Virus record (IMG/VR): IMGVR_UViG_3300029908_000004
Span: 1 to 64,000 of that record
Reading direction: 5' to 3' (one strand)
DNA length: 64,000 nt
This document shows, piece after piece, positions 37,057-59,565 of the stretch (position 1 is its first letter; each line of letters starts with the position of its first letter). The notes under the pieces are model-generated. The model searched no databases. It worked only from the letters and a program-made list of their open reading frames with translations, and had not been told where the DNA came from. A program made the position numbers and the translations under genes.

Positions 37057-37191
37057 GGATATAGTTTGAACAAGATGTTTTTCGATGCTACCATTACACC
37101 AAGCTGGCATAAATTATTAAATGGTGCCAGCCCTGGGATTTGAACCCAGACCCGTTCGTTATGAGTGAAGATAACCTTGCTCTGTCGACCC
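37057..37191 (-). ncRNA. YrlA-like Y RNA 1 (permuted tRNA-like domain)
   Basis: GGGTCGA-N8-GGTTATC, then T arm CTGGG-TTCAAAT-CCCAG, acceptor GGCTGGC/GCCAGCT closed by a loop, D arm GTGT-AATGGTA-GCAT, and 3' CTTGTTCAAACTATATCC pairing with the 5' end. Confidence 0.85.
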
Positions 37192-37214: not shown

Positions 37215-37348
37215 GGATATGGGGTGGAATTGGGTAAGCCTTTCGGCTGACGGATGTTCTACCATTTGAACTACATCCACTCGATTGAATGGAAGATTGG
37301 ACTCGAACCAATAACATTCTGTTTGAGATAACCAATTTCTATCGACCC
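37215..37348 (-). ncRNA. YrlA-like Y RNA 2
   Basis: GGGTCGA-N8-GGTTATC; ATTGG-TTCGAGT-CCAAT; acceptor hairpin; GTTC-AAATGGTA-GAAC; 3' CCAATT...ATATCC. Confidence 0.85.
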
Positions 37349-41488: not shown

Positions 41489-42154
41489 ATGATAACCCTA
41501 AGTATGGAACAATTTACCAAACTAAATAGTCGCTCACCAGTAGAATGTAAATGTGAACAATGTAACAGTCTTTTCTACAGAGTAAAACATGATTTACAGA
41601 CAGCTATTCGTAGGAAAGAACCAATATCATTTTGTTCGCCGAAGTGTTATGGTTTATACAGAAACACTAAGACTACTGTCAAATGTTTATGGTGTAAGTC
41701 TGAAGTAGTTAGAATACCAACTACTAAGAATGTCTTCTGTTCGAGATCGTGTTCTGCAAAATATAATAACACACATAAAACATTTGGGACTAGAAGATCG
41801 AAACTTGAGAGATTTCTAGAAGAACAAATAAAATTATCGTACCCCAATTTGGAGCTTATATGCAATAGCAAATCAGTCATCGGTTCAGAGTTAGATTTCT
41901 ATTTCCCGAGGCTCAGATTGGCGATAGAACTCAATGGTATTCTGCACTACGAACCAATCTATGGGACAGATAAATTCTCTAAAATTGTTGACAATGATAG
42001 ACAAAAAGTTAGATTATGTGAAGCTATGGGTATTGAGCTAGCAGTTATTAATTCTTCGTCATGTTCACGCATGAGCGCAGTATTTAAAACTAAGTATTTG
42101 GGGATAACACGTGAATTAATAGACTCTGTTATTGATAGAGGAAATTTGGGGTAG
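41489..42154 (+). mobile_element. Antisense PD-(D/E)XK/Vsr-like homing endonuclease gene with zinc fingers (HEG4)
   Basis: ELDFYFPRLRLAIELNGILHY; CSPKC/CSRSC repeats; TTGACA-18nt-TATACT promoter at 41449-41478. Confidence 0.8.
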
Positions 42155-42221
42155 ATAGAGAGGTTCAAACTCTCGCTAAGGGAGCCACAGACCCTCGTGC
42201 TTTCATTACACTATACCTACC
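42147..42221 (-). tRNA. tRNA-His(GTG), replacement copy
   Basis: G-1:C73; AGGGT-CT GTG GC-TCCCT; CCA. Confidence 0.88.
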
Positions 42222-48316: not shown

Positions 48317-48853
48317 TTATATCTTCTCTCCTTGACCCTTCTCTGCGGATTCTTCTTTAGTACCTACCAAACCAATGTGAGTTAATCTCCCCGGGGTGTC
48401 AGCTTCAGTTAGAACCTTCTTCATAACTCCCAATAGGAGAAGAGCACTTTCACGTTGACCTTCTGTTATATCCTCGTGCGTATCAACTGAACGCTTAACT
48501 AATAGTTCCTTAAGAACTATACGTTCGTCGTCACTGATAGTTAGAGTATCTAATTTCTCTAATAACTTGTCCATTTGAAGATATCGAGGGTGAGGATGAT
48601 GCAAATCAGCTGTTAATTTAGCTTGGACTGTCGCCCATAACGGTGTGACTTGAGTATTTAGAACTGTTAGTTGTTTATCGATATCTTGTTTCCATACCAA
48701 CAACGCGTCCTCAGCTTCTTTTCTGTCTTTTTTAGCTTGTACATATAACGTATACACCAAGCCAAGTGTAGCAGAAAACCCAGCTAGTAAAAAACTGAAC
48801 CACCAATTTCCTGTTGTTGCTAACTCTGTAAATACTATTGTAAAAAGTAACAT
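48317..48853 (-). CDS. Membrane-anchored coiled-coil protein
   Basis: Transmembrane helix followed by a helical region. Confidence 0.6.
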   Translation of the reverse strand: MLLFTIVFTELATTGNWWFSFLLAGFSATLGLVYTLYVQAKKDRKEAEDALLVWKQDIDKQLTVLNTQVTPLWATVQAKLTADLHHPHPRYLQMDKLLEKLDTLTISDDERIVLKELLVKRSVDTHEDITEGQRESALLLLGVMKKVLTEADTPGRLTHIGLVGTKEESAEKGQGEKI

Positions 48854-48929: not shown

Positions 48930-49260
48930 AGGTAGACCCTAACCCGGTTAATCAACTAAGAAGATTAACAATACGCTGGGGCAGAAACACTGGCTAGGCT
49001 GGAAATCATCCAGGCTGGCAGAGTGTCGATACCAACAGCGTTTACGTTAACAGTTTTGCCTGTTATTGTTGTATAGTCGTTTAACGTGAGCCTATAGCAC
49101 GACCTGTCATTATTTGCAATTCATACCAAGCGAACCCGGGAGCGGCCCCTATGGTGGACACTCGGGATTCAACCTCCGTGCCCTTATAATTGGTGGACCG
49201 CGAGGGAGTTGAACCCTCGTTAATGGTCATGCTTACAAATAAATCATACAGGTTTAACCG
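48930..49260 (-). ncRNA. ssrA: Circularly permuted two-piece tmRNA
   Basis: The acceptor piece (49260-49191: T arm GAGGG-TTCAACT-CCCTC, GCGGTCC-A-CCA) precedes the coding piece starting GGGCCGC at 49148 (G3:U70). Helix 2 TTGCAAATAA/TTATTTGTAA; pk1-like element; AATAACA-GGC resume context; tag ORF 49060-48965. Confidence 0.85.
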
Positions 49261-49746
49261 TTAGAACTTAAATACTATTCCACCGCTATAACGAAACCCA
49301 GAGACCCCTTTACCATCATGAATTGAATATATGTGGTCTAGGTCAATGGCTCTAATAGCAACATGTTTAAATAGGTTGTAATCAACTGCTCCGCCAGTGG
49401 CTATAGCAAATCCAGAATCCGAAAACTTATTAATCTCTGCACGTTCCCAGCCTAGTAATACGTGGCTGGATACGTCTATGTTTCCTACTGAGAATAACTT
49501 TACAGTAGGACCAACAGAGTATACATAAGCTCGCTTACCGTCTGAGAAATTGCCACTTAGGTCTACTGTTGCACCAAACCTAGGAGTGAAGAAGTAAGTT
49601 CCATCTGCTTGATACCCAAGCACGTTGGAAAACTGACTTACATCTGTATGGCGATATTGAATACCACCGTAGACCTCGACCTTGTCTTGGGCGAGTGCGA
49701 AAGTACTTAATAGTACCATAGCAACAGCTAACATGAAATTACGCAT
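49261..49746 (-). CDS. Outer-membrane beta-barrel protein (8-stranded, OmpX/Ail-like)
   Basis: Signal peptide, amphipathic strands, C-terminal GIVFKF. Confidence 0.75.
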   Translation of the reverse strand: MRNFMLAVAMVLLSTFALAQDKVEVYGGIQYRHTDVSQFSNVLGYQADGTYFFTPRFGATVDLSGNFSDGKRAYVYSVGPTVKLFSVGNIDVSSHVLLGWERAEINKFSDSGFAIATGGAVDYNLFKHVAIRAIDLDHIYSIHDGKGVSGFRYSGGIVFKF

Positions 49747-51283: not shown

Positions 51284-51362
51284 TGGTGGATCGTATGAGA
51301 ATCGAACTCATCTGAAATCTTCTTTGCAAAAGAAGTGACCACCCCGTGCAGTCCCACAACCC
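51284..51362 (-). tRNA. tRNA-Ala(TGC), replacement copy
   Basis: CTTCT-TT TGC AA-AGAAG; G3:U70; CCA. Confidence 0.88.
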
Positions 51363-51368
51363 ATTTAT

Positions 51369-51899
51369 ATGCCAATTCGTAACTGTTTATATTGTAACAA
51401 ACTATTTGATGCTCCACAACGTGATATTACCAGAGGTAATGGTAAATACTGTTCCAGGAAATGCTCTGGAAACTATAAGAGCTCTCTTCCTAGTAAAGCT
51501 CCTATTATAGAGCTTACTTGTGCTTATTGTAATAGTACATTTACTAAGCCTTCCAGATACGTTAGAAAAGCCAATTCTAGAAGCGGATTGCGCTTTTGTA
51601 ACCGTAAGTGTAAAGAACTTGGACAGCGATTAGACGGTGGTAACATAAAAGCTATACAACCATCTCATTTTGGCACAGGTACCGGAGAACACCATTATAG
51701 AGCAAAAGCTCTAAACGCATTCCCAAATAAGTGTAATAGATGTGGATATGATGAATTAATAGGGATCCTTGTTGTACACCACAAGGATCGTAACCGTTCC
51801 AATTCTCATCTATCAAACTTAGAGATTCTGTGCCCAAATTGTCACGCTAAAGAACATTACATTAATCACGATGGATCGTATAGCTCAAAGAGAAAATGA
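51369..51899 (+). mobile_element. Antisense HNH homing endonuclease gene (HEG6)
   Basis: CNRCG...VHHKDRNRSNSHLSNLEILCPNCHAKEH; CSRKC repeats; promoter motif at 51256-51266. Confidence 0.9.
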
Positions 51900-51900
51900 T

Positions 51901-51944
51901 GCTGCTTTGCAAGAGCATTGCTCTCCCGAATGAGCTAAGAGCCC
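51901..51944 (-). pseudogene. 5' fragment of the original tRNA-Ala(TGC)
   Basis: GGGCTCTTAGCTCATTCGGGAGAGCAATGCTCTTGCAAAGCAG, abutting the HEG6 stop codon. Confidence 0.8.
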
Positions 51945-52284
51945 ACGTCGTGCTTTCCTATTTAGTATACCACCAAATGTTGGAAAACACTAGAATCTTT
52001 AATCTCTTTCTCTTTCTCTTTCGCGACTCAACGCCTTCTGTTCGCGAGACCACCAGAACTTCCATGAAACACTTCTACCATCGTAGTACCAGCCAAGCGC
52101 TTTCAAACGTTCGTACGTTTCTGGTGAGGTTCCTGTCTTCTTAAGTTCTTCTGGCATTTTCTTTTCCTCATCTTGGGATTTTAGTGGAGTAGCCCGGCTA
52201 TCCGCGTCGGGCTACCCCGGTTAATTTGATGTCAAACCTAAATGGTTTTAACAAATTACGGTAGTTGTATAAACACGTGTCTGG

Positions 52285-52465
52285 AACTACGATTGTTTAC
52301 GTTAATCTCGGTGCTTTACCATTGAGCTACTCAGGCATATGTTTTGGGGCCCGAGGAGAGCATCGAACTCTCATACCCGATTTTGAAAGAAATCGTCTAC
52401 CAGATGTTGTTTCTACCAAGTGAACCTCTTGGGTAATAGATTAACGTTAAACTTAATCGTTTATT
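52285..52465 (-). ncRNA. Permuted tRNA-like RNA with a long closing stem and no GGGUCGA motif
   Basis: T arm GAGAG-TTCGATG-CTCTC, CTCGGGC-C-CCA, short linker, GCCTGAG, D arm GCTC-AATGGTA-AAGC; flanks ACGTTAATCT/AGATTAACGT pair. Confidence 0.7.
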
Positions 52466-52790
52466 TAACCTGACCCTGAGGTTGAAAGAATCCTTGCGGA
52501 CTCTTCCCAAGCTTGTTAGTTATTAGCCACTTTGTCTTTGTACTTAAGACCGGGCTTATTGCGTTTGTCCATCTTTTTCTTTGCTGATGCAATGTGTTTC
52601 TGCTTGTTACTGAACTTCATTGTACCACCTCTATAAAACATTTCTCCTACGGCAAGAAGACGAATCTTCTAGGTGGTAACATCGCATTAAACCCACGACT
52701 CTTGTTGGTTATGACCCAACCTCCGTTTACTACGTCCGTGCGACTAGTTCGTAGCGACCTCGGGGATTCCGTCCTATAGGAGAAAACTTA

Positions 52791-53549
52791 TTATGCTAAT
52801 GGAACAAGGATATAATCCATCAGCTTCTTGCCAATCTTTGAGCTTGATACGTCAATGTCCTGCTCATTGGCGCGGGCTCTTGCCTTCTTGACGAATCTTG
52901 ACAGGTTTTCAACCCTCTCCAGAAGTGAAGCTTTCATAACTGGAGTCAACATTGAGGACCATTCCTGAGTTCTCAATAGACCTGTTGCAATGGTTTCTTC
53001 CAGAATTTGACACTGTGCTGGATGTTTGTCTGTAGCCGGGTACAGAACTAGTGGTTTCTTTACAAGTGTTTTGCGCTCTGATTCCACGTCTCTCGCTTGA
53101 TAGATTCCTACTGAGCGGTTATCGTCTTGCTTGAACCCTTTTGTTGGATCAAGTGTTGGAATAGCTGTCAGAAGAACCTGAACTTCCTTCAACCTCTTTT
53201 CCAACTGCAATAGACTTGTGGCGGGGACATCCTTCAGGATTGTGTTTCCGTCATCGTCTACCACATCTGCTCTTGCTTGAGTATTTGCTACATCAACCTG
53301 ATGTGACAGGTCAATACTCTTGATCTGGAATGCCGACCACCACAACAGTTCATCTTTCACTGTTGTCTGAATCTCTGACACTTCCTCGATCTTGACTGGT
53401 GCACCTTCTGTATAAGCAGAGTAGGTCTTACGAATCTCACTGAAATGAGATCTTTTCTTCTCGAAGGTGGCCTCTAATTCAGTCCGTGTTTTTGCGGCTT
53501 GATTTTCCAAATTCTTCTCAACCGCTAGTAACTCATGTAGCTTTGGCAT
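52791..53549 (-). CDS. Conserved phage coiled-coil protein
   Basis: MPKLHELLAVEK...VPATSLLQLEK...IPTLDP...YPATDKHPAQ...KKARARAN. Confidence 0.8.
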   Translation of the reverse strand: MPKLHELLAVEKNLENQAAKTRTELEATFEKKRSHFSEIRKTYSAYTEGAPVKIEEVSEIQTTVKDELLWWSAFQIKSIDLSHQVDVANTQARADVVDDDGNTILKDVPATSLLQLEKRLKEVQVLLTAIPTLDPTKGFKQDDNRSVGIYQARDVESERKTLVKKPLVLYPATDKHPAQCQILEETIATGLLRTQEWSSMLTPVMKASLLERVENLSRFVKKARARANEQDIDVSSSKIGKKLMDYILVPLA

Positions 53550-54016: not shown

Positions 54017-54068
54017 ATGAATCCTTCACGTTATTGTAGGGTGGTTCCCCACCCTACAATGTTGAATG

Positions 54069-54224
54069 TTAGAGCCTACCCAATACTAGAAGTATAATGA
54101 GGATTAAAAGAACTAATCCTATTCCTCCACTTGGAAAGTATCCCCAATTCTGACTGTGTGGCCAAGAAGGCAACGCACCGACGAAGAAGAAGATCAATAG
54201 TATTACTAGGATTATTCCTAACAT
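54069..54224 (-). CDS. DUF3309-family small membrane protein (51 aa)
   Basis: MLGIILVILLIFFFVGALPSWPHSQNWGYFPSGGIGLVLLILIILLVLGRL. Confidence 0.85.
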   Translation of the reverse strand: MLGIILVILLIFFFVGALPSWPHSQNWGYFPSGGIGLVLLILIILLVLGRL

Positions 54225-54235
54225 CTGTTACTCCT

Positions 54236-54895
54236 TTACATTGATACGTTTATTGCTATTGCTACACCAGCATGTCTACTATCATATAGATAATACCCAC
54301 CACCTTCATAAACAATATAGCAATCATCTGTATCATACCAGTTATCGCCCCAGTCCCCGGGATAAGGGTCAGCTAGTACAAACCAAAAACCGTTATATTG
54401 GAAGCTTGGGAACCCATTAACCAATCTATATGGGTAGCTGCCAATTCTGAATGAGTGTTCTCTTCCGAATGACGTTCTAAACCTATCATCTGGAATATGA
54501 TACCCGTTATACCCGCCACGAGCTGCCCAAGTCTTATGTTCACCAGCCCAATTACCTGACTTGTGAGCTTGCCAATCACTTCTTTGTTCTTTTGGTCTCT
54601 GTTCTTGTTTAGGCTGTTGAGCTTGCTTCGGAGCATGTTGTTGTTTAGGCTGTTGATCTCTTTGTTCTACTCGTTGAGCGCTCGGCTTCGACATCTGAGA
54701 AGGCTGGCTGCGTGGATGTGATTGAGGACGCTGTTGGTCCATATTATGTTGTGGTTTCGCACTCTGTTGTGATTTAACTTGTTCGTGCTGTTGAGCTGGC
54801 TTTTCTTGCTTTTCACCAGACTTCTGTGCGTATACTGGGGCTATCCCAATAAGTGCACACATCAAGATACCTAAGTATCTACTTTTCATGAACAT
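54236..54895 (-). CDS. Secreted Q/P-rich protein with an aromatic beta-rich C-terminal domain (RcnB-like)
   Basis: Signal peptide, low-complexity QQP region, HIPDDRFRTSFGREHSFRI...WYDTDDCYIVY. Confidence 0.7.
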   Translation of the reverse strand: MFMKSRYLGILMCALIGIAPVYAQKSGEKQEKPAQQHEQVKSQQSAKPQHNMDQQRPQSHPRSQPSQMSKPSAQRVEQRDQQPKQQHAPKQAQQPKQEQRPKEQRSDWQAHKSGNWAGEHKTWAARGGYNGYHIPDDRFRTSFGREHSFRIGSYPYRLVNGFPSFQYNGFWFVLADPYPGDWGDNWYDTDDCYIVYEGGGYYLYDSRHAGVAIAINVSM

Positions 54896-54974: not shown

Positions 54975-55373
54975 CTATCCATCTATGTTAGTGTTTTGTT
55001 TCTTCTTCCAGTCACGTATTGCAGCCGCTATCGCGTCTTGGGCAAGAACCGAGCAATGAATCTTGACCGGAGGCAGTGACAGCTCTTTCACTATGTCGGT
55101 GTTCTTGATCTGCAGAGCCTCGTCCACCGTCTTGCCTTTTACCCACTCGGTCGCCAGCGATGACGATGCGATCGCCGAGCCGCAGCCGAACGTCTTGAAC
55201 TTCGCGTCCTCGATGATCCTGGTCTGCGGGTTTACCCGGATTTGCAGCTTCATGACGTCGCCGCATTCCGGAGCGCCGACCAGCCCGGTGCCAACCTCAT
55301 CTGCATTCTTGTCCATGGTGCCGACGTTGCGCGGATTGGTGTAGTGATCCAGTACCTTATCGCTGTAAGCCAT
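54975..55373 (-). CDS. iscU: Fe-S cluster scaffold protein IscU/NifU
   Basis: YSDKVLDHYTNPRNVG...GAPECGDVMKLQI...KFKTFGCGSAIASSS...LPPVKIHCSVLA. Confidence 0.97.
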   Translation of the reverse strand: MAYSDKVLDHYTNPRNVGTMDKNADEVGTGLVGAPECGDVMKLQIRVNPQTRIIEDAKFKTFGCGSAIASSSLATEWVKGKTVDEALQIKNTDIVKELSLPPVKIHCSVLAQDAIAAAIRDWKKKQNTNIDG

Positions 55374-56986: not shown

Positions 56987-58687
56987 TTACTCCGCTTCTG
57001 CTTCTTCAGTTTCCAATACTTCCGTTTTCCCTGAAACGAATTGGGCAATCAACGAAGGCACATTGGTATCGAATCCAACCACGTCCAACGAACGTACATC
57101 GTTTGGATCTGCGATCGAGAATCCAGTTGCTGTCATCCCGATGACAATCTGATGAGCGTTACGTCCAGAACTCTGACGATAGCTCTCCAAAGCGCTAAAT
57201 ACGTGTTTAGGTCCTGCCCAAGTCTCGTTGTCAGTGATGTTGACAAACACATCGACTGGCATCTTCTTTTCTTGTGCATCCTTATATGGAAGTGAACAAT
57301 CTGTTCCTCCCCACCCTGTGCGTAGTGCCTTGGATATTGCTGCGTCTAGCTTCATGGATTTAACCAATCCAACATCAATCATCTTGGTGTTGTAGGAAGC
57401 AACGTGATGCCATGGCTCATTATGCATGATTACCATAGCCATTGCTACTGCACCCATGATTGGTGACATGTTTGGACAACCAACAAGATTTCCCCATCCC
57501 ATTGAGCCGGAACAATCCAAGCCAATGTAATAGTTCAAATTGGTGGTTTCAGCATTCTTAAACGTCTTATAGAACGCTGCGTCCATAGCATCCAAAACTG
57601 GTTTCACCACTGTCCAAGTCAACGAGCCACGAATGCCATGACCAGTTTGATAGGTTAACATAGCATTCAGAACAGTTAGTGGGTGAACACGACTACGTTG
57701 CAGATATTCCTGATCCGACAGACGTGTTACTACTAGCTTTGACGCCTCTGATAGAGGAGCTAACAGCTTGATGCTACTCATCTTACCAAGGTTCCTGATC
57801 ATTGCGTTCATGGGCATTTTCTGAAGCAATGCCTCCCAAACTGCAACGTGGTTCAATGCCTCTGTAGGGATCATTTCGCGAGTGAGGTTGTACTTCTGAA
57901 TCGCTGAAATGATTACCTTTGGGTCTTTTTCATTCTTCATTGCCTCGAACTGCTTAATCAGTTCTGGCAAGTCCTTCTCTAAATCGGTTGCTCCGTGCAG
58001 ACCTTTGGTAGCCCAATCAAACAAGGCTTTCTGCCCATTCGACAACGTAGCATGGGTACCTGCATGGGTGGCACGAAGGATGTCGCGATGGCTCCATCCT
58101 TGTGTTCCATCCACACGCCGTGATTGGTATTTCACCATCTGATAAGCCAGTTTCTGCTCATCTTTCTGTGTGTACCAATCTGCTACGCCGTTGCGTAGTG
58201 ACCTATTCCAACGCATCTTTGCGGCACCTTCGGCCTGTTTTGACCGCATGCCTTTCAGATATTCCATTAGTTGGAACAAATGCGTTCCGATACGTGCTAC
58301 GTCTGGCAGTTTATCCAAGGCGTAACCACGAGTGGATTTGTCACCGAATGCTATACACTGTGCCAACGCGAACAGGGCATAGTCATTCTTTGGAGCCCGG
58401 CCAGATACAGAGATATCGACAATCGTTTTTACTGTCTTCTCTCCATCTGCCGAAATACAGCGTTCAACGCACTTTGCGTTGTCACGCGTCAACTTGTCGG
58501 CACCAACATAATAAGTGCCACCTTCGCTTCCAAGAATTATAAATCTCTGGAGTCGGTCCCAGTCACTCAGTTCAAAAACATAACCTCCAGCGTTATTCTG
58601 AACTTGATTCTTTTCTGGGAATGGTTCACTTTGAGGAATTGTTGGCTTCATCGCCCCATACACATTTGTTAGGTTGGGTTTCTTCAT
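56987..58687 (-). CDS. rsr: Ro60/Rsr TROVE-domain RNA-binding protein with a vWA domain
   Basis: QVQNNAGGYVF...DRLQRFIILGSEGGTYY...KYQSR..GWSHRDILRATH...MIRNLGKMS...SRVHPL...LDCSGSM...GGTDCSLP...TDNETW...VVGFDTNVP. Confidence 0.96.
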   Translation of the reverse strand: MKKPNLTNVYGAMKPTIPQSEPFPEKNQVQNNAGGYVFELSDWDRLQRFIILGSEGGTYYVGADKLTRDNAKCVERCISADGEKTVKTIVDISVSGRAPKNDYALFALAQCIAFGDKSTRGYALDKLPDVARIGTHLFQLMEYLKGMRSKQAEGAAKMRWNRSLRNGVADWYTQKDEQKLAYQMVKYQSRRVDGTQGWSHRDILRATHAGTHATLSNGQKALFDWATKGLHGATDLEKDLPELIKQFEAMKNEKDPKVIISAIQKYNLTREMIPTEALNHVAVWEALLQKMPMNAMIRNLGKMSSIKLLAPLSEASKLVVTRLSDQEYLQRSRVHPLTVLNAMLTYQTGHGIRGSLTWTVVKPVLDAMDAAFYKTFKNAETTNLNYYIGLDCSGSMGWGNLVGCPNMSPIMGAVAMAMVIMHNEPWHHVASYNTKMIDVGLVKSMKLDAAISKALRTGWGGTDCSLPYKDAQEKKMPVDVFVNITDNETWAGPKHVFSALESYRQSSGRNAHQIVIGMTATGFSIADPNDVRSLDVVGFDTNVPSLIAQFVSGKTEVLETEEAEAE

Positions 58688-59502: not shown

Positions 59503-59565
59503 GGATATAAACAACTTAGTCAGGAAGTTTATCAAAGTAATAAGGTAATCCTAACTATTCGACCC
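59503..59565 (-). ncRNA. Minimal Y-RNA-family member
   Basis: GGGTCGA-N8-GATTACC...CCTGACTAAGTTGTTTATATCC; shares its 3' 17 nt with the 59097 copy. Confidence 0.75.

What the first reader, a model, noticed from the sequence alone, without database searches (positions are those of the whole stretch)
52285..52465. Permuted tRNA-like RNA without the Y motif
Seen: the 3' half (T arm, CTCGGGC-C-CCA) precedes the 5' half (GCCTGAG, canonical D arm) with an 8-nt linker. The anticodon stem is replaced by a long stem joining the flanks (ACGTTAATCT/AGATTAACGT plus ACGATT/AATCGT). The topology matches YrlA and two-piece tmRNA but it has neither signature. Inference: a further class of permuted tRNA mimic.
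Basis: partly seen in the sequence, partly recalled or inferred. Interest (0 to 1): 0.6.

Follow-up and report, generated by a model that had tools for sequence, protein, structure and literature searches.

The report
Permuted tRNA mimic linked to DUF7873
The flagged stretch is the tRNA-shaped core of a roughly 300-base phage RNA that sits just behind an uncharacterised phage gene (DUF7873) in nearly every phage carrying that gene, so it looks like an undescribed protein-RNA pair related to, but separate from, the known Ro60/Y-RNA system.

Summary
The permuted tRNA-like element is real (minus strand, core 52386..52297). It has a T arm, a 7-bp acceptor hairpin (CUCGGGC/GCCUGAG), an encoded C-CCA, an 8-nt linker, a D arm and a 4-bp anticodon-stem analogue. 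It is not a dead tRNA. Homologues with compensatory changes at every acceptor and T-stem pair lie 96-536 nt downstream of DUF7873 (PF25283) homologues, on the same strand. A strict scan finds them in 59 of 78 IMG/VR loci. My covariance model finds them in all but two loci, and in cultured Rhizobium, Ralstonia, Klebsiella and Vibrio phages. The family is distinct from Ro60-linked YrlA. Rfam YrlA scores 26.6 bits (cut-off 69), the Ro-binding motif is at chance level, and NCCA follows the 3' acceptor strand in 49/56 members versus 2/31 for Ro60-linked modules. DUF7873 phages almost never carry Ro60, and vice versa. The whole RNA (about 52511..52186) also holds a conserved stem, a GNRA hairpin and UYAR repeats with 6-nt spacing. 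Best reading: a two-part DUF7873-RNA cassette whose tRNA-like end is opened by RNase P. Function is inferred, not shown. No expression data could be obtained.

The parts
52791..53549 (-). DUF7873 protein gene (252 aa), the conserved partner gene directly upstream of the RNA
   Evidence: Pfam PF25283 E 9e-64. Homologues precede the RNA in nearly all loci. Predicted homodimer, ipSAE 0.68 versus best control 0.00.
52506..52511 (-). P1 5' strand (CUUGGG), likely start of the structured RNA
   Evidence: Aligns with UUCGGGUG / UUUGGGUG of relatives. Pairs with 52433..52428. There is a C-G to U-A compensatory change at the third pair.
52488..52503 (-). P2 hairpin with GNRA tetraloop (GCAA)
   Evidence: Conserved hairpin position in alignment A3; all 3 counted pairs show changes on both sides.
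52435..52487 (-). Repeat domain: UYAR-type units at 6-nt spacing (UCAGGG, UCAGGU, UUAAGU, UUAACG, UUAAUC ...).
   Evidence: Across 57 family members, spacing of 6 between successive UYAR occurs 70 times versus 2.6 expected, and spacing of 12 occurs 25 times versus 2.1.
52428..52433 (-). P1 3' strand (CCCAAG)
52391..52403 (-). 5' strands of the proximal closing helix (CUGG 52403..52400; ACGAUU 52396..52391)
   Evidence: Complementary to CCAG 52284..52281 and AAUCGU 52294..52289. Near-flank pairing is general in the family (mean z -2.68, 38/57 below -2). The Rfam YrlA alignment uses the same strands.
52373..52385 (-). CAAAA, then the anticodon-stem analogue 3' strand UCGG (52380..52377), then the 4-nt variable loop GUAU
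   Evidence: The 'CAAA' and the 4-bp stem are conserved; the stem is 98.7% paired with changes on both sides at all 4 pairs.
52356..52372 (-). T arm (5 bp, loop UUCGAUG)
   Evidence: 100% paired in 19 relatives, with compensatory changes at all 5 pairs.
52330..52355 (-). Acceptor hairpin: 3' strand CUCGGGC, C73-CCA, linker AAACAUAU ending in U at -1, 5' strand GCCUGAG
   Evidence: 7/7 pairs. 100% paired in relatives, with compensatory changes at all 7 pairs. NCCA in 49/56 family members and linkers ending AU in 31/56.
52313..52327 (-). D arm (GCUC / AAGC, loop with GG)
52299..52311 (-). Anticodon-stem analogue 5' strand CCGA (52311..52308), G, then the unit AUUAACGU that matches the family motif AU(U/C)A(G/A)(G/A)CU
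52281..52294 (-). 3' strands of the closing helix (AAUCGU, CCAG)
52186..52218 (-). GC-rich 11-bp hairpin about 95 nt after the D arm; probable 3' end or terminator of the RNA (weak U tract)
   Evidence: Seen in the sequence. By eye, relatives carry a GC-rich terminator-like hairpin or the next tRNA gene at a similar distance. The consensus terminator scan did not call it.

Best explanation
The flagged element is the tRNA-like domain of a structured RNA of about 325 nt (roughly 52511..52186, minus strand). Together with the upstream gene DUF7873 it forms a self-contained two-part cassette found in many unrelated phages. SHOWN: (1) the RNA is conserved with covariation; (2) it is tied to DUF7873 and not to Ro60; (3) its hallmarks are a 7-bp acceptor hairpin with encoded NCCA, an A-rich linker that usually ends in U at -1, a short anticodon-stem analogue flanked by CAAA and AU(U/C)ARRCU, and an upstream domain (P1 stem, GNRA hairpin, UYAR units every 6 nt). 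INFERRED: the RNA is transcribed with DUF7873, because in several relatives P1 starts 3-10 nt after the stop codon. The acceptor hairpin is built like an ideal bacterial pre-tRNA junction, so RNase P would cut before G+1 and 3' trimming would expose a CCA end. That would give two base-paired pieces, as reported for M. smegmatis YrlA (PMC4201824). DUF7873, predicted to be at least a dimer, would bind the 6-nt repeats, one unit per subunit, much as TRAP and HutP read triplet repeats (my own knowledge). The tRNA-shaped, CCA-ended domain would dock the particle on tRNA-handling machinery, in the way a Y RNA tethers Ro60 to an effector. The cellular target and benefit to the phage are unknown.
For: Core anatomy. 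Homologue L124 follows a DUF7873 gene of 33% identity (E 5e-42). It has the same 8-nt linker and an identical D arm but different, still complementary, acceptor and T stems. A strict scan finds a 7/7-acceptor module 96-536 nt downstream of DUF7873, same strand, in 59/78 IMG/VR loci. Model R1 finds a hit of 42 bits or more in all but L192 (20 bits) and L166 (only 98 nt of downstream sequence). That includes 17 of 19 loci not used for training and four cultured phages: RHph_TM30 72.9 and D505 66.0 bits (both in the training alignment A4), phiRSL1 53.6, and for KpLz-2_45 a 57.1-bit hit at L130:3055-3164, outside the L130 stretch that was in A4, which itself scores 37.7. Covariation on 19 relatives: 91.3% paired versus 68.9% in shuffles (0/500), covariation score 0.636 versus 0.201, slid controls 37-50%. 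Independence from Ro60: TROVE in 2/49 DUF7873 phage records, DUF7873 in 0/44 Ro60 phage records. Class differences in NCCA and the Ro motif. 6-nt periodicity. No other conserved protein gene within 2.5 kb in 70 loci. DUF7873 homodimer: ipSAE 0.68 versus best control 0.00, runs agree in at least 97% of contacts, partner pLDDT at least 87. That mark was reached by 20 of 30 proteins solved as pairs and 1 of 23 solved as single chains, and the counts hold only roughly because my own alignment was used. In the window R1 scores the candidate 73.6 bits, far above all other hits, but the candidate was in the training set.
Against: Nothing shows that DUF7873 binds RNA. Its fold matches nothing informative, and linkage could simply reflect co-transcription. 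About a third of family members have long linkers in which CCA pairs with UGG, which is a poorer RNase P substrate. The discriminator base varies (C 17, G 16, U 10, A 6), so a uniform aminoacylation identity is unlikely. This phage also encodes Ro60 4.5 kb upstream on the same strand, so Ro60 binding of this RNA is not excluded here. The complex prediction supports dimerisation but does not demonstrate it.
Confidence: 0.5

Rival explanations
1. It is a cis-acting 3' UTR element of the DUF7873 mRNA. RNase P cleavage at the tRNA-like junction would punctuate the transcript and leave the mRNA with a compact, CCA-ended tRNA-like 3' end that resists exonucleases. This would resemble tRNA punctuation or plant-virus tRNA-like ends (my own knowledge). 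No stable RNP would be needed.
For: In several relatives P1 starts 3-10 nt after the DUF7873 stop codon, leaving no room for a separate promoter. Strand and order are strictly conserved. The features favour RNase P: a 7-bp acceptor, NCCA and U at -1.
Against: It does not explain the conserved 6-nt repeat domain, P1 or P2. In the window and other loci extra small ORFs sit between DUF7873 and the RNA (offsets 340-540 nt), so the RNA is not always the immediate UTR. The two readings are not exclusive.
Confidence: 0.2
2. It is a decoy or sponge. A tRNA-shaped, CCA-ended RNA carrying many copies of an anticodon-loop-like unit (U-YAR-R) would soak up a host factor that attacks or modifies tRNA, such as an anticodon nuclease or a toxin targeting the CCA end. 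DUF7873 would have a separate or helper role.
For: The cassette sits in tRNA-rich accessory regions of phages. The unit next to the anticodon-stem analogue repeats in tandem upstream. The cassette moves between unrelated genomic contexts, as accessory or counter-defence genes do.
Against: No defence-related family matches DUF7873 or its neighbours. No specific nuclease is implicated. The strict pairing with one protein gene is unexplained by a pure decoy.
Confidence: 0.15
3. It is this phage's YrlA-type Y RNA and works with the phage Ro60/Rsr encoded at 58687..56987.
For: Full-length Rfam YrlA alignment, E 0.0056 in a 2-kb scan. It is on the same strand and 4.5 kb downstream of rsr. Chen et al. 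found YrlA mostly within 4 kb of rsr on the same strand (PMC4201824). Environmental phage YrlA hits also score below the cut-off, at 20-55 bits.
Against: 26.6 bits versus a cut-off of 69. No GNCGAAN0-1G motif: only GACGAU, at a position that is not conserved in relatives. The family occurs almost only in phages without Ro60 (2/49). The window already has 11 elements carrying the Ro-type motif, 5 of them directly upstream of rsr.
Confidence: 0.08
4. It is a true permuted tRNA gene. The paired flanks would be cut and ligated to close an anticodon loop, and RNase P and 3' processing would then open the acceptor end, giving a decoding tRNA. This is the route known for permuted tRNA genes of the red alga Cyanidioschyzon merolae (my own knowledge).
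For: The break lies exactly at the anticodon-loop position. The 3' side starts A-U-Y-A-R-R and the 5' side ends C-A-A-A, like the two halves of an anticodon loop. The tRNA core is complete, with encoded CCA.
Against: No splicing endonuclease or ligase gene is linked. The flanks form ordinary helices with large asymmetric loops, and no conserved bulge-helix-bulge was seen. The unit at the 'anticodon' position also repeats upstream, so it behaves as a binding motif.
Confidence: 0.04
5. It is a two-piece (permuted) tmRNA.
For: The topology is the same: T arm and CCA-ended 3' acceptor strand, then a spacer, then the 5' acceptor strand.
Against: No tmRNA family matches here even at E up to 10. Pair 3:70 is C-G, not the G-U alanine identity pair. 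The D arm is complete. No conserved tag reading frame exists among close relatives (inspection). A separate permuted-tmRNA candidate lies at 49253..49010 (42.5 bits, cut-off 47).
Confidence: 0.02
6. It is a dead, rearranged tRNA (the junction of a tandem tRNA duplication) with no function.
For: The phage's tRNA genes encode CCA, and the element looks like the 3' two-thirds of one tRNA copy followed by the 5' third of the next. This may well be how the family arose.
Against: It is conserved across phages whose DUF7873 proteins are only 33-60% identical. Every stem pair shows compensatory changes, with 100% pairing in the acceptor and T stems.
Confidence: 0.01

Closest known systems
YrlA, the bacterial/phage Y RNA with a tRNA-like domain (Rfam RF02553; Chen et al. 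2014, PMC4201824)
   Same: The order is the same permuted one: T arm, acceptor hairpin, D arm, closed by a short anticodon-stem analogue and by pairing of the flanks. Rfam aligns the full model. Ro60-linked YrlA-type RNAs score 30-58 bits with my model of this family. M. smegmatis YrlA also has a 7-bp acceptor stem, is cut by RNase P and receives CCA (PMC4201824).
   Different: The score is far below the Rfam cut-off (26.6 versus 69). The Ro60-binding motif is missing (1/56 versus 13/31). CCA is encoded (49/56 versus 2/31). The RNA follows DUF7873 instead of neighbouring rsr. The family is found in phages without Ro60. It has an extra upstream domain with 6-nt repeats.
Two-piece (circularly permuted) tmRNA (Rfam RF01849, RF04321)
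   Same: The gene order is permuted, with a CCA-ended 3' acceptor strand before the 5' acceptor strand. The expected maturation is excision of the spacer into two paired RNAs.
   Different: There is no G3-U70 pair, the D arm is full, no tag frame is conserved, and no tmRNA model matches. The phage has a separate candidate at 49253..49010.
Permuted tRNA genes of Cyanidioschyzon merolae and other algae (my own knowledge, not tested here)
   Same: The 3' half lies upstream of the 5' half, a short linker joins the acceptor ends, the break is at the anticodon loop, and the flanks are paired.
   Different: Those genes mature by a eukaryal/archaeal splicing endonuclease and a ligase acting on a bulge-helix-bulge. 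No such motif or enzyme is linked here, and the setting is a bacterial virus.
TRAP and HutP, oligomeric proteins that read (G/U)AG or UAG triplet repeats at fixed spacing (my own knowledge)
   Same: Tandem short units containing a YAR triplet at a fixed 6-nt spacing, next to a gene for a protein predicted to self-associate.
   Different: DUF7873 shows no sequence or fold similarity to TRAP or HutP. RNA binding by DUF7873 is untested.

Membership tests
YrlA (RF02553) | Permuted tRNA-like domain: T arm, acceptor hairpin, D arm, closed by a short stem | tested here: met
YrlA (RF02553) | Score at or above Rfam's gathering cut-off (69 bits) | tested here: not met
   26.6 bits. Relatives score 32-37 bits.
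YrlA (RF02553) | Ro60/Rsr recognition motif GNCGAAN0-1G in the 5' strand (PMC4201824) | tested here: not met
   Only GACGAU at 52397..52392, which is not conserved in alignment A3. Family: full motif 1/56 and GNCGA 5/56 (chance level), against 13/31 and 18/31 in Ro60-linked modules.
YrlA (RF02553) | Encoded next to rsr (mostly within 4 kb, same strand) | tested here: inconclusive
   In the window rsr is 4.5 kb upstream on the same strand. At family level TROVE is present in only 2/49 phage records, and DUF7873 in 0/44 Ro60 phages.
YrlA (RF02553) | Bound by Ro60/Rsr in vivo | not testable with these tools
   Needs immunoprecipitation.
Two-piece tmRNA | Match to a tmRNA covariance model | tested here: not met
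   No tmRNA family among matches up to E 10 at 51300..53300.
Two-piece tmRNA | G3-U70 alanine identity pair and a reduced D arm | tested here: not met
   Pair 3:70 is C-G, and the D stem and loop with GG are complete.
Two-piece tmRNA | Conserved tag reading frame ending in a stop codon | tested here: not met
   Reading frames through the repeat domain differ between the closest relatives (inspection).
DUF7873-linked permuted tRNA-like RNA (family proposed here) | Lies downstream of a DUF7873 gene on the same strand | tested here: met
   The T arm starts 419 nt after the stop codon of 53549..52791. In the family the offset is 96-536 nt.
DUF7873-linked permuted tRNA-like RNA (family proposed here) | 7-bp acceptor hairpin, encoded NCCA, A-rich linker ending in U | tested here: met
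   CUCGGGC / C-CCA / AAACAUAU / GCCUGAG.
DUF7873-linked permuted tRNA-like RNA (family proposed here) | CAAA before, and AU(U/C)ARRCU after, the anticodon-stem analogue | tested here: met
   CAAAA-UCGG and CCGA-G-AUUAACGU. The unit has CG where most members have GC.
DUF7873-linked permuted tRNA-like RNA (family proposed here) | Upstream domain: P1 stem, GNRA hairpin, UYAR units at 6-nt spacing | tested here: met
DUF7873-linked permuted tRNA-like RNA (family proposed here) | High score with covariance model R1 | tested here: met
   73.6 bits, the top hit in the window. The candidate was in the training alignment. Independent support comes from 17 of 19 untrained loci scoring 42-65 bits.
Permuted tRNA gene (algal type) | Bulge-helix-bulge at the flank junction and a linked splicing endonuclease or ligase | tested here: not met
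   No conserved neighbouring protein other than DUF7873. The flank helices have large asymmetric loops. No formal bulge-helix-bulge search was run.

The most novel reading that the evidence does not exclude
DUF7873 and this RNA form a previously unrecognised phage ribonucleoprotein. A self-associating protein would load onto 6-nt repeat units of an RNA whose other end is a two-piece, RNase P-matured, CCA-ended tRNA mimic. It would be a Ro60-independent counterpart of Y-RNA particles that phages use to engage or subvert the host's tRNA or translation machinery.
Probability: 0.4. Interest if true: 0.85.

Novelty: new variant of a known kind. Interest (0 to 1): 0.75.

Why it matters
Permuted tRNA mimics in bacteria and phages have been known only as YrlA-type partners of Ro60, and what their tRNA-like domain does is still open. 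Here the same kind of domain is coupled to a different, uncharacterised protein family. The pair behaves as a portable two-gene cassette: 257 of 339 candidate stretches in IMG/VR encode a DUF7873 relative. It also occurs in cultured phages of Klebsiella, Vibrio, Ralstonia and Rhizobium, where I confirmed the RNA. DUF7873 is further present in phages of Gordonia and other hosts, where I did not check the RNA. This assigns a likely RNA partner to a domain of unknown function. It shows that the tRNA-like module is reused independently of Ro60. The near-universal encoded CCA and pre-tRNA-like linker make a clear, testable prediction of RNase P maturation into a two-piece RNA. It also gives tractable laboratory systems for asking what tRNA mimicry buys a phage.

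Tried and rejected
(1) blastn of the region against cultured phage genomes found no match. (2) Single-protein searches for close Rsr relatives in IMG/VR found nothing. The 70-75% identical Rsr relatives lie on contigs that are too short or have no DNA on hand. (3) An acceptor-specific DNA pattern in IMG/VR found only a near-identical copy. A looser pattern in metagenomes gave the first true homologue, L124. (5) DUF7873 function: the PDB search by Foldseek had no match at E 0.001 or better. Its top rows were Cas7-type backbone subunits at E 0.02-0.1 with TM about 0.12, which I do not count as evidence. The wide VIA search gave only generic helical matches, best Z 9.4. The PDB sequence profile, ESM Atlas, BFVD and PADLOC gave nothing informative. 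PHROGs had no family. No paper mentions DUF7873. (6) I read the repeat domain as a tmRNA-like tag frame and rejected that: the frames and stop codons are not conserved between close relatives. (8) RNAalifold did not recover P1 or the closing helix from the MAFFT alignment. P1 was supported only after I set the register by hand. The closing helix rests on duplex-energy z-scores, not on column-wise covariation. (9) complex prediction failed twice before it ran.
Full report
SETTING. The window is the first 64 kb of a 215-kb IMG/VR phage record. It carries 28 tRNA genes, all on the minus strand. It also carries a Ro60/Rsr orthologue (TROVE plus vWA_Ro60 domains, 566 aa) at 58687..56987. The finding lies on the same strand, 4.5 kb downstream of rsr. 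It is directly downstream of a 252-aa DUF7873 gene (53549..52791, Pfam E 9e-64).

THE OBSERVATION. Read on the minus strand, the element has these parts:
- T arm, 52372..52356.
- 3' acceptor strand CUCGGGC, then C-CCA.
- 8-nt linker AAACAUAU.
- 5' acceptor strand GCCUGAG, giving 7/7 pairs with the 3' strand.
- U8-A9 and a D arm, 52327..52313.
A genome-wide scan for this arrangement found it here and at two further sites near 37 kb. The other hits were ordinary tRNA 3' ends. That scan also shows that the phage's tRNA genes encode CCA.

KNOWN FAMILIES. At gathering thresholds Rfam reports only tRNAs in the window. In a permissive 2-kb scan the only relevant match is YrlA: 26.6 bits against a cut-off of 69, E 0.0056, over the full model. 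No tmRNA model matches. According to Chen et al. 2014 (PMC4201824), YrlA is defined by three things:
- a permuted tRNA-like domain;
- a 5' motif GNCGAAN0-1G thought to bind Ro60;
- a position mostly within 4 kb of rsr on the same strand.
They also report that M. smegmatis YrlA has a 7-bp acceptor stem, is cut by RNase P in vitro, and receives CCA in vivo.

A SEPARATE Y-RNA FAMILY IN THE WINDOW. A repeat search turned up about 11 elements on the minus strand that share GGGUCGA(A)..GGUUAUC at the 5' side and ..UCAAUCCAUAUCC at the 3' side. Each folds as a lower stem, an internal loop and an upper stem. Several carry the exact GNCGAAN0-1G motif. Five lie directly upstream of rsr, and two (near 37.3 and 37.2 kb) carry permuted tRNA-like modules. 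The flagged element lacks it.

RELATIVES AND THE LINK TO DUF7873. Near-identical copies of the phage carry an identical RNA. A degenerate pattern that left the acceptor free found a metagenome contig, L124. Its module has a different but complementary T stem (GUUGG/CCAAU) and acceptor stem (CUGGGUC/GACCCAG). It has the same C-CCA, an 8-nt linker ending in AU, and an identical D arm. Immediately upstream is a DUF7873 gene that is 33% identical to the window's (E 5e-42). I then checked DUF7873 loci from IMG/VR and from cultured phages (Rhizobium RHph_TM30, Klebsiella KpLz-2_45, Vibrio D505). All showed a 7/7-acceptor permuted module 100-300 nt behind the gene, within unannotated gaps.

A profile search then fetched 79 IMG/VR loci. 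A strict scan found the module 96-536 nt downstream, on the same strand, in 59 of 78 loci, giving 56 unique sequences. NCCA directly follows the 3' acceptor strand in 49 of those 56. The linker ends in AU in 31 of 56. In a minority of members the linker is long and CCA pairs with an upstream UGG.

I built a covariance model of the core, R1, from 61 sequences with 20 base pairs. It finds a hit of 42 bits or more downstream of DUF7873 in every locus except L192 (20 bits) and L166 (only 98 nt of downstream sequence). That includes 17 of 19 loci not used in training, and phiRSL1 at 53.6 bits. In the window the candidate scores 73.6 bits. The next hits are the two 37-kb modules (44.9 and 38.6 bits) and a tRNA dimer (41.6 bits).

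COVARIATION. Nineteen relatives, whose DUF7873 proteins are 46-60% identical to the window's, align with the window over the whole RNA. RNAalifold predicts the T arm, acceptor stem, D arm, anticodon-stem analogue and a GNRA hairpin. Of 23 predicted pairs, 22 show compensatory changes. After adding a long-range stem, P1, the 32-pair structure is 91.3% paired against 68.9% in shuffles (0/500). Its covariation score is 0.636 against 0.201, and slid controls give 37-50%. The acceptor and T stems are 100% paired. Its two 5' strands lie inside the upstream repeat domain. Their complementarity to the 3' flank in this phage comes from a palindromic UUAACGUUAA-like repeat unit.

Duplex-energy tests on 57 members agree. 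The near flanks pair (mean z -2.68, 38/57 below -2). The far-upstream domain does not pair with the 3' tail (mean z 0.01).

ANATOMY OF THE WHOLE RNA. In window coordinates, minus strand:
- P1 5' strand, 52511..52506.
- P2 GNRA hairpin, 52503..52488.
- Repeat domain, 52487..52435.
- P1 3' strand, 52433..52428.
- A spacer of about 40 nt holding the 5' strands of the closing helix.
- CAAAA, the anticodon-stem analogue and a 4-nt variable loop.
- T arm, acceptor hairpin and D arm.
- The other strand of the stem analogue, then the unit AUUAACGU.
- The 3' strands of the closing helix.
- About 60 nt of tail.
- A GC-rich hairpin, 52218..52186.
In relatives the same distance ends at a terminator-like hairpin or at the next tRNA gene.

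The repeat domain is a family hallmark. Successive UYAR motifs are 6 nt apart 70 times against 2.6 expected, and 12 nt apart 25 times against 2.1. The same unit, AU(U/C)ARRCU, follows the anticodon-stem analogue. In several relatives P1 starts 3-10 nt after the DUF7873 stop codon, so the RNA is probably co-transcribed with the gene. In the window a 41-aa lysine-rich ORF (52641..52516) lies between the gene and the RNA.

INDEPENDENCE FROM Ro60.
- TROVE occurs in only 2 of 49 DUF7873 phage records, and in 0 of the 29 that are at least 90% complete.
- DUF7873 occurs in 0 of 44 Ro60 phage records.
- In Ro60-linked permuted modules, GNCGA lies 20-50 nt before the T arm in 18/31, the full motif occurs in 13/31, NCCA in 2/31, and a 7-bp acceptor in 15/31.
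- In DUF7873-linked modules the figures are 5/56 (chance level), 1/56 and 49/56. All 56 have a 7-bp acceptor, but the scan required that.
The cores are nevertheless of one kind. DUF7873-linked RNAs hit Rfam YrlA at 32-37 bits. Ro60-linked RNAs hit R1 at up to 57.8 bits.

THE PROTEIN. DUF7873 has an invariant H176-P177..Q179 within a nearly invariant ATDKHPAQ block. Its AlphaFold model (pLDDT 82.9) shows long helices and a long beta hairpin. No search gave an informative relative, and no paper mentions the family. No other protein gene is conserved within 2.5 kb across 70 loci, so gene and RNA form a two-part cassette.

A homodimer is predicted with ipSAE 0.68 against a best control of 0.00. 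The runs agree in at least 97% of contacts and the partner pLDDT is at least 87. In calibration that mark was reached by 20 of 30 proteins solved as pairs and by 1 of 23 solved as single chains. Those counts hold only roughly here, because my own alignment was used. The result supports self-association but does not show it.

INTERPRETATION. Three things are shown: a conserved, covarying structured RNA; its coupling to DUF7873; and its separation from Ro60-linked YrlA and from tmRNA. The mechanism is inferred. The acceptor hairpin has the features of a good bacterial RNase P substrate: a 7-bp stem, a T arm, encoded RCCA-like NCCA and U at -1. By analogy with M. smegmatis YrlA it should be opened into a CCA-ended, two-piece tRNA mimic. 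The periodic units would be a platform for a self-associating DUF7873. The tRNA-like end would dock the particle on tRNA-handling machinery.

Three alternatives remain open: a cis-acting 3' UTR processing or stabilising element, a decoy for tRNA-targeting host factors, and Ro60 binding in this particular phage. A dead tRNA and a tmRNA are effectively excluded. No expression data could be obtained.

VERDICT. I extend it with a partner gene and a second RNA domain. I found no published description. I rate it a new variant of a known kind, with high interest.

Noticed in passing
window minus strand; motif starts at 59563, 59450, 59162, 59074, 58991, 51024, 50902, 50782, 50211, 37346, 37189: A family of about 11 Y-RNA-like elements. 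Each has a lower stem (..GGGU / AUAUCC..), an internal-loop motif GGGUCGA(A) matching the published Ro60 motif GNCGAAN0-1G, an upper stem and a variable module. Five sit directly upstream of rsr. Rfam YrlA misses most of them.
   Followed up: partly
window 37326..37240 and 37162..37070 (minus): Two further permuted tRNA-like modules, embedded in Y-motif elements. The second has GGCUGGC-A-CCA, a 13-nt AT-rich linker and GCCAGCU. They score 38.6 and 44.9 bits with R1 and 26.6 bits with Rfam YrlA (core only). The first shares about 70% identity over 115 nt with a YrlA-type RNA next to rsr in another phage (L030/L093).
   Followed up: partly
window 49253..49010 (minus): Probable two-piece (permuted) tmRNA in the gap between ORFs 49746..49261 and 48853..48317. 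Rfam tmRNA_permuted scores 42.5 bits (cut-off 47), with weaker tmRNA and alpha_tmRNA matches alongside. ARAGORN did not call it.
   Followed up: partly
window 51944..51872 (minus): Degenerate tRNA-like sequence (Rfam tRNA 19.6 bits, below the cut-off of 29) with mismatched acceptor and T stems; possibly a decayed tRNA gene.
   Followed up: no
window 42220..42150 (minus): A tRNA found by Rfam (50 bits) but not listed by ARAGORN.
   Followed up: no
window 52641..52516 (minus): A 41-aa lysine-rich ORF between DUF7873 and the RNA; an internal in-frame AUG at 52620 with a good ribosome-binding site would give 34 aa. Other family members also have unrelated small ORFs inserted at this spot (offsets 340-540 nt).
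   Followed up: no
Ro60 phage records G016, G012/G013, G019, G025, G026, G032, G040: Many environmental Ro60 phages carry tandem arrays of 3-6 YrlA-like hits. In 435-465 kb megaphages these lie more than 100 kb from rsr. None of the 44 records reaches Rfam's YrlA cut-off (best 54.9 bits), so the Rfam model under-detects phage Y RNAs.
   Followed up: no
window 55373..54975 and 54619..54464 region (minus): The phage encodes a NifU-like Fe-S scaffold protein (Pfam E 7e-55). Per precomputed calls on L003, it also encodes a DUF3309 peptide (window about 54223..54068) and a ferritin-like protein in the same tRNA-rich region.
   Followed up: no
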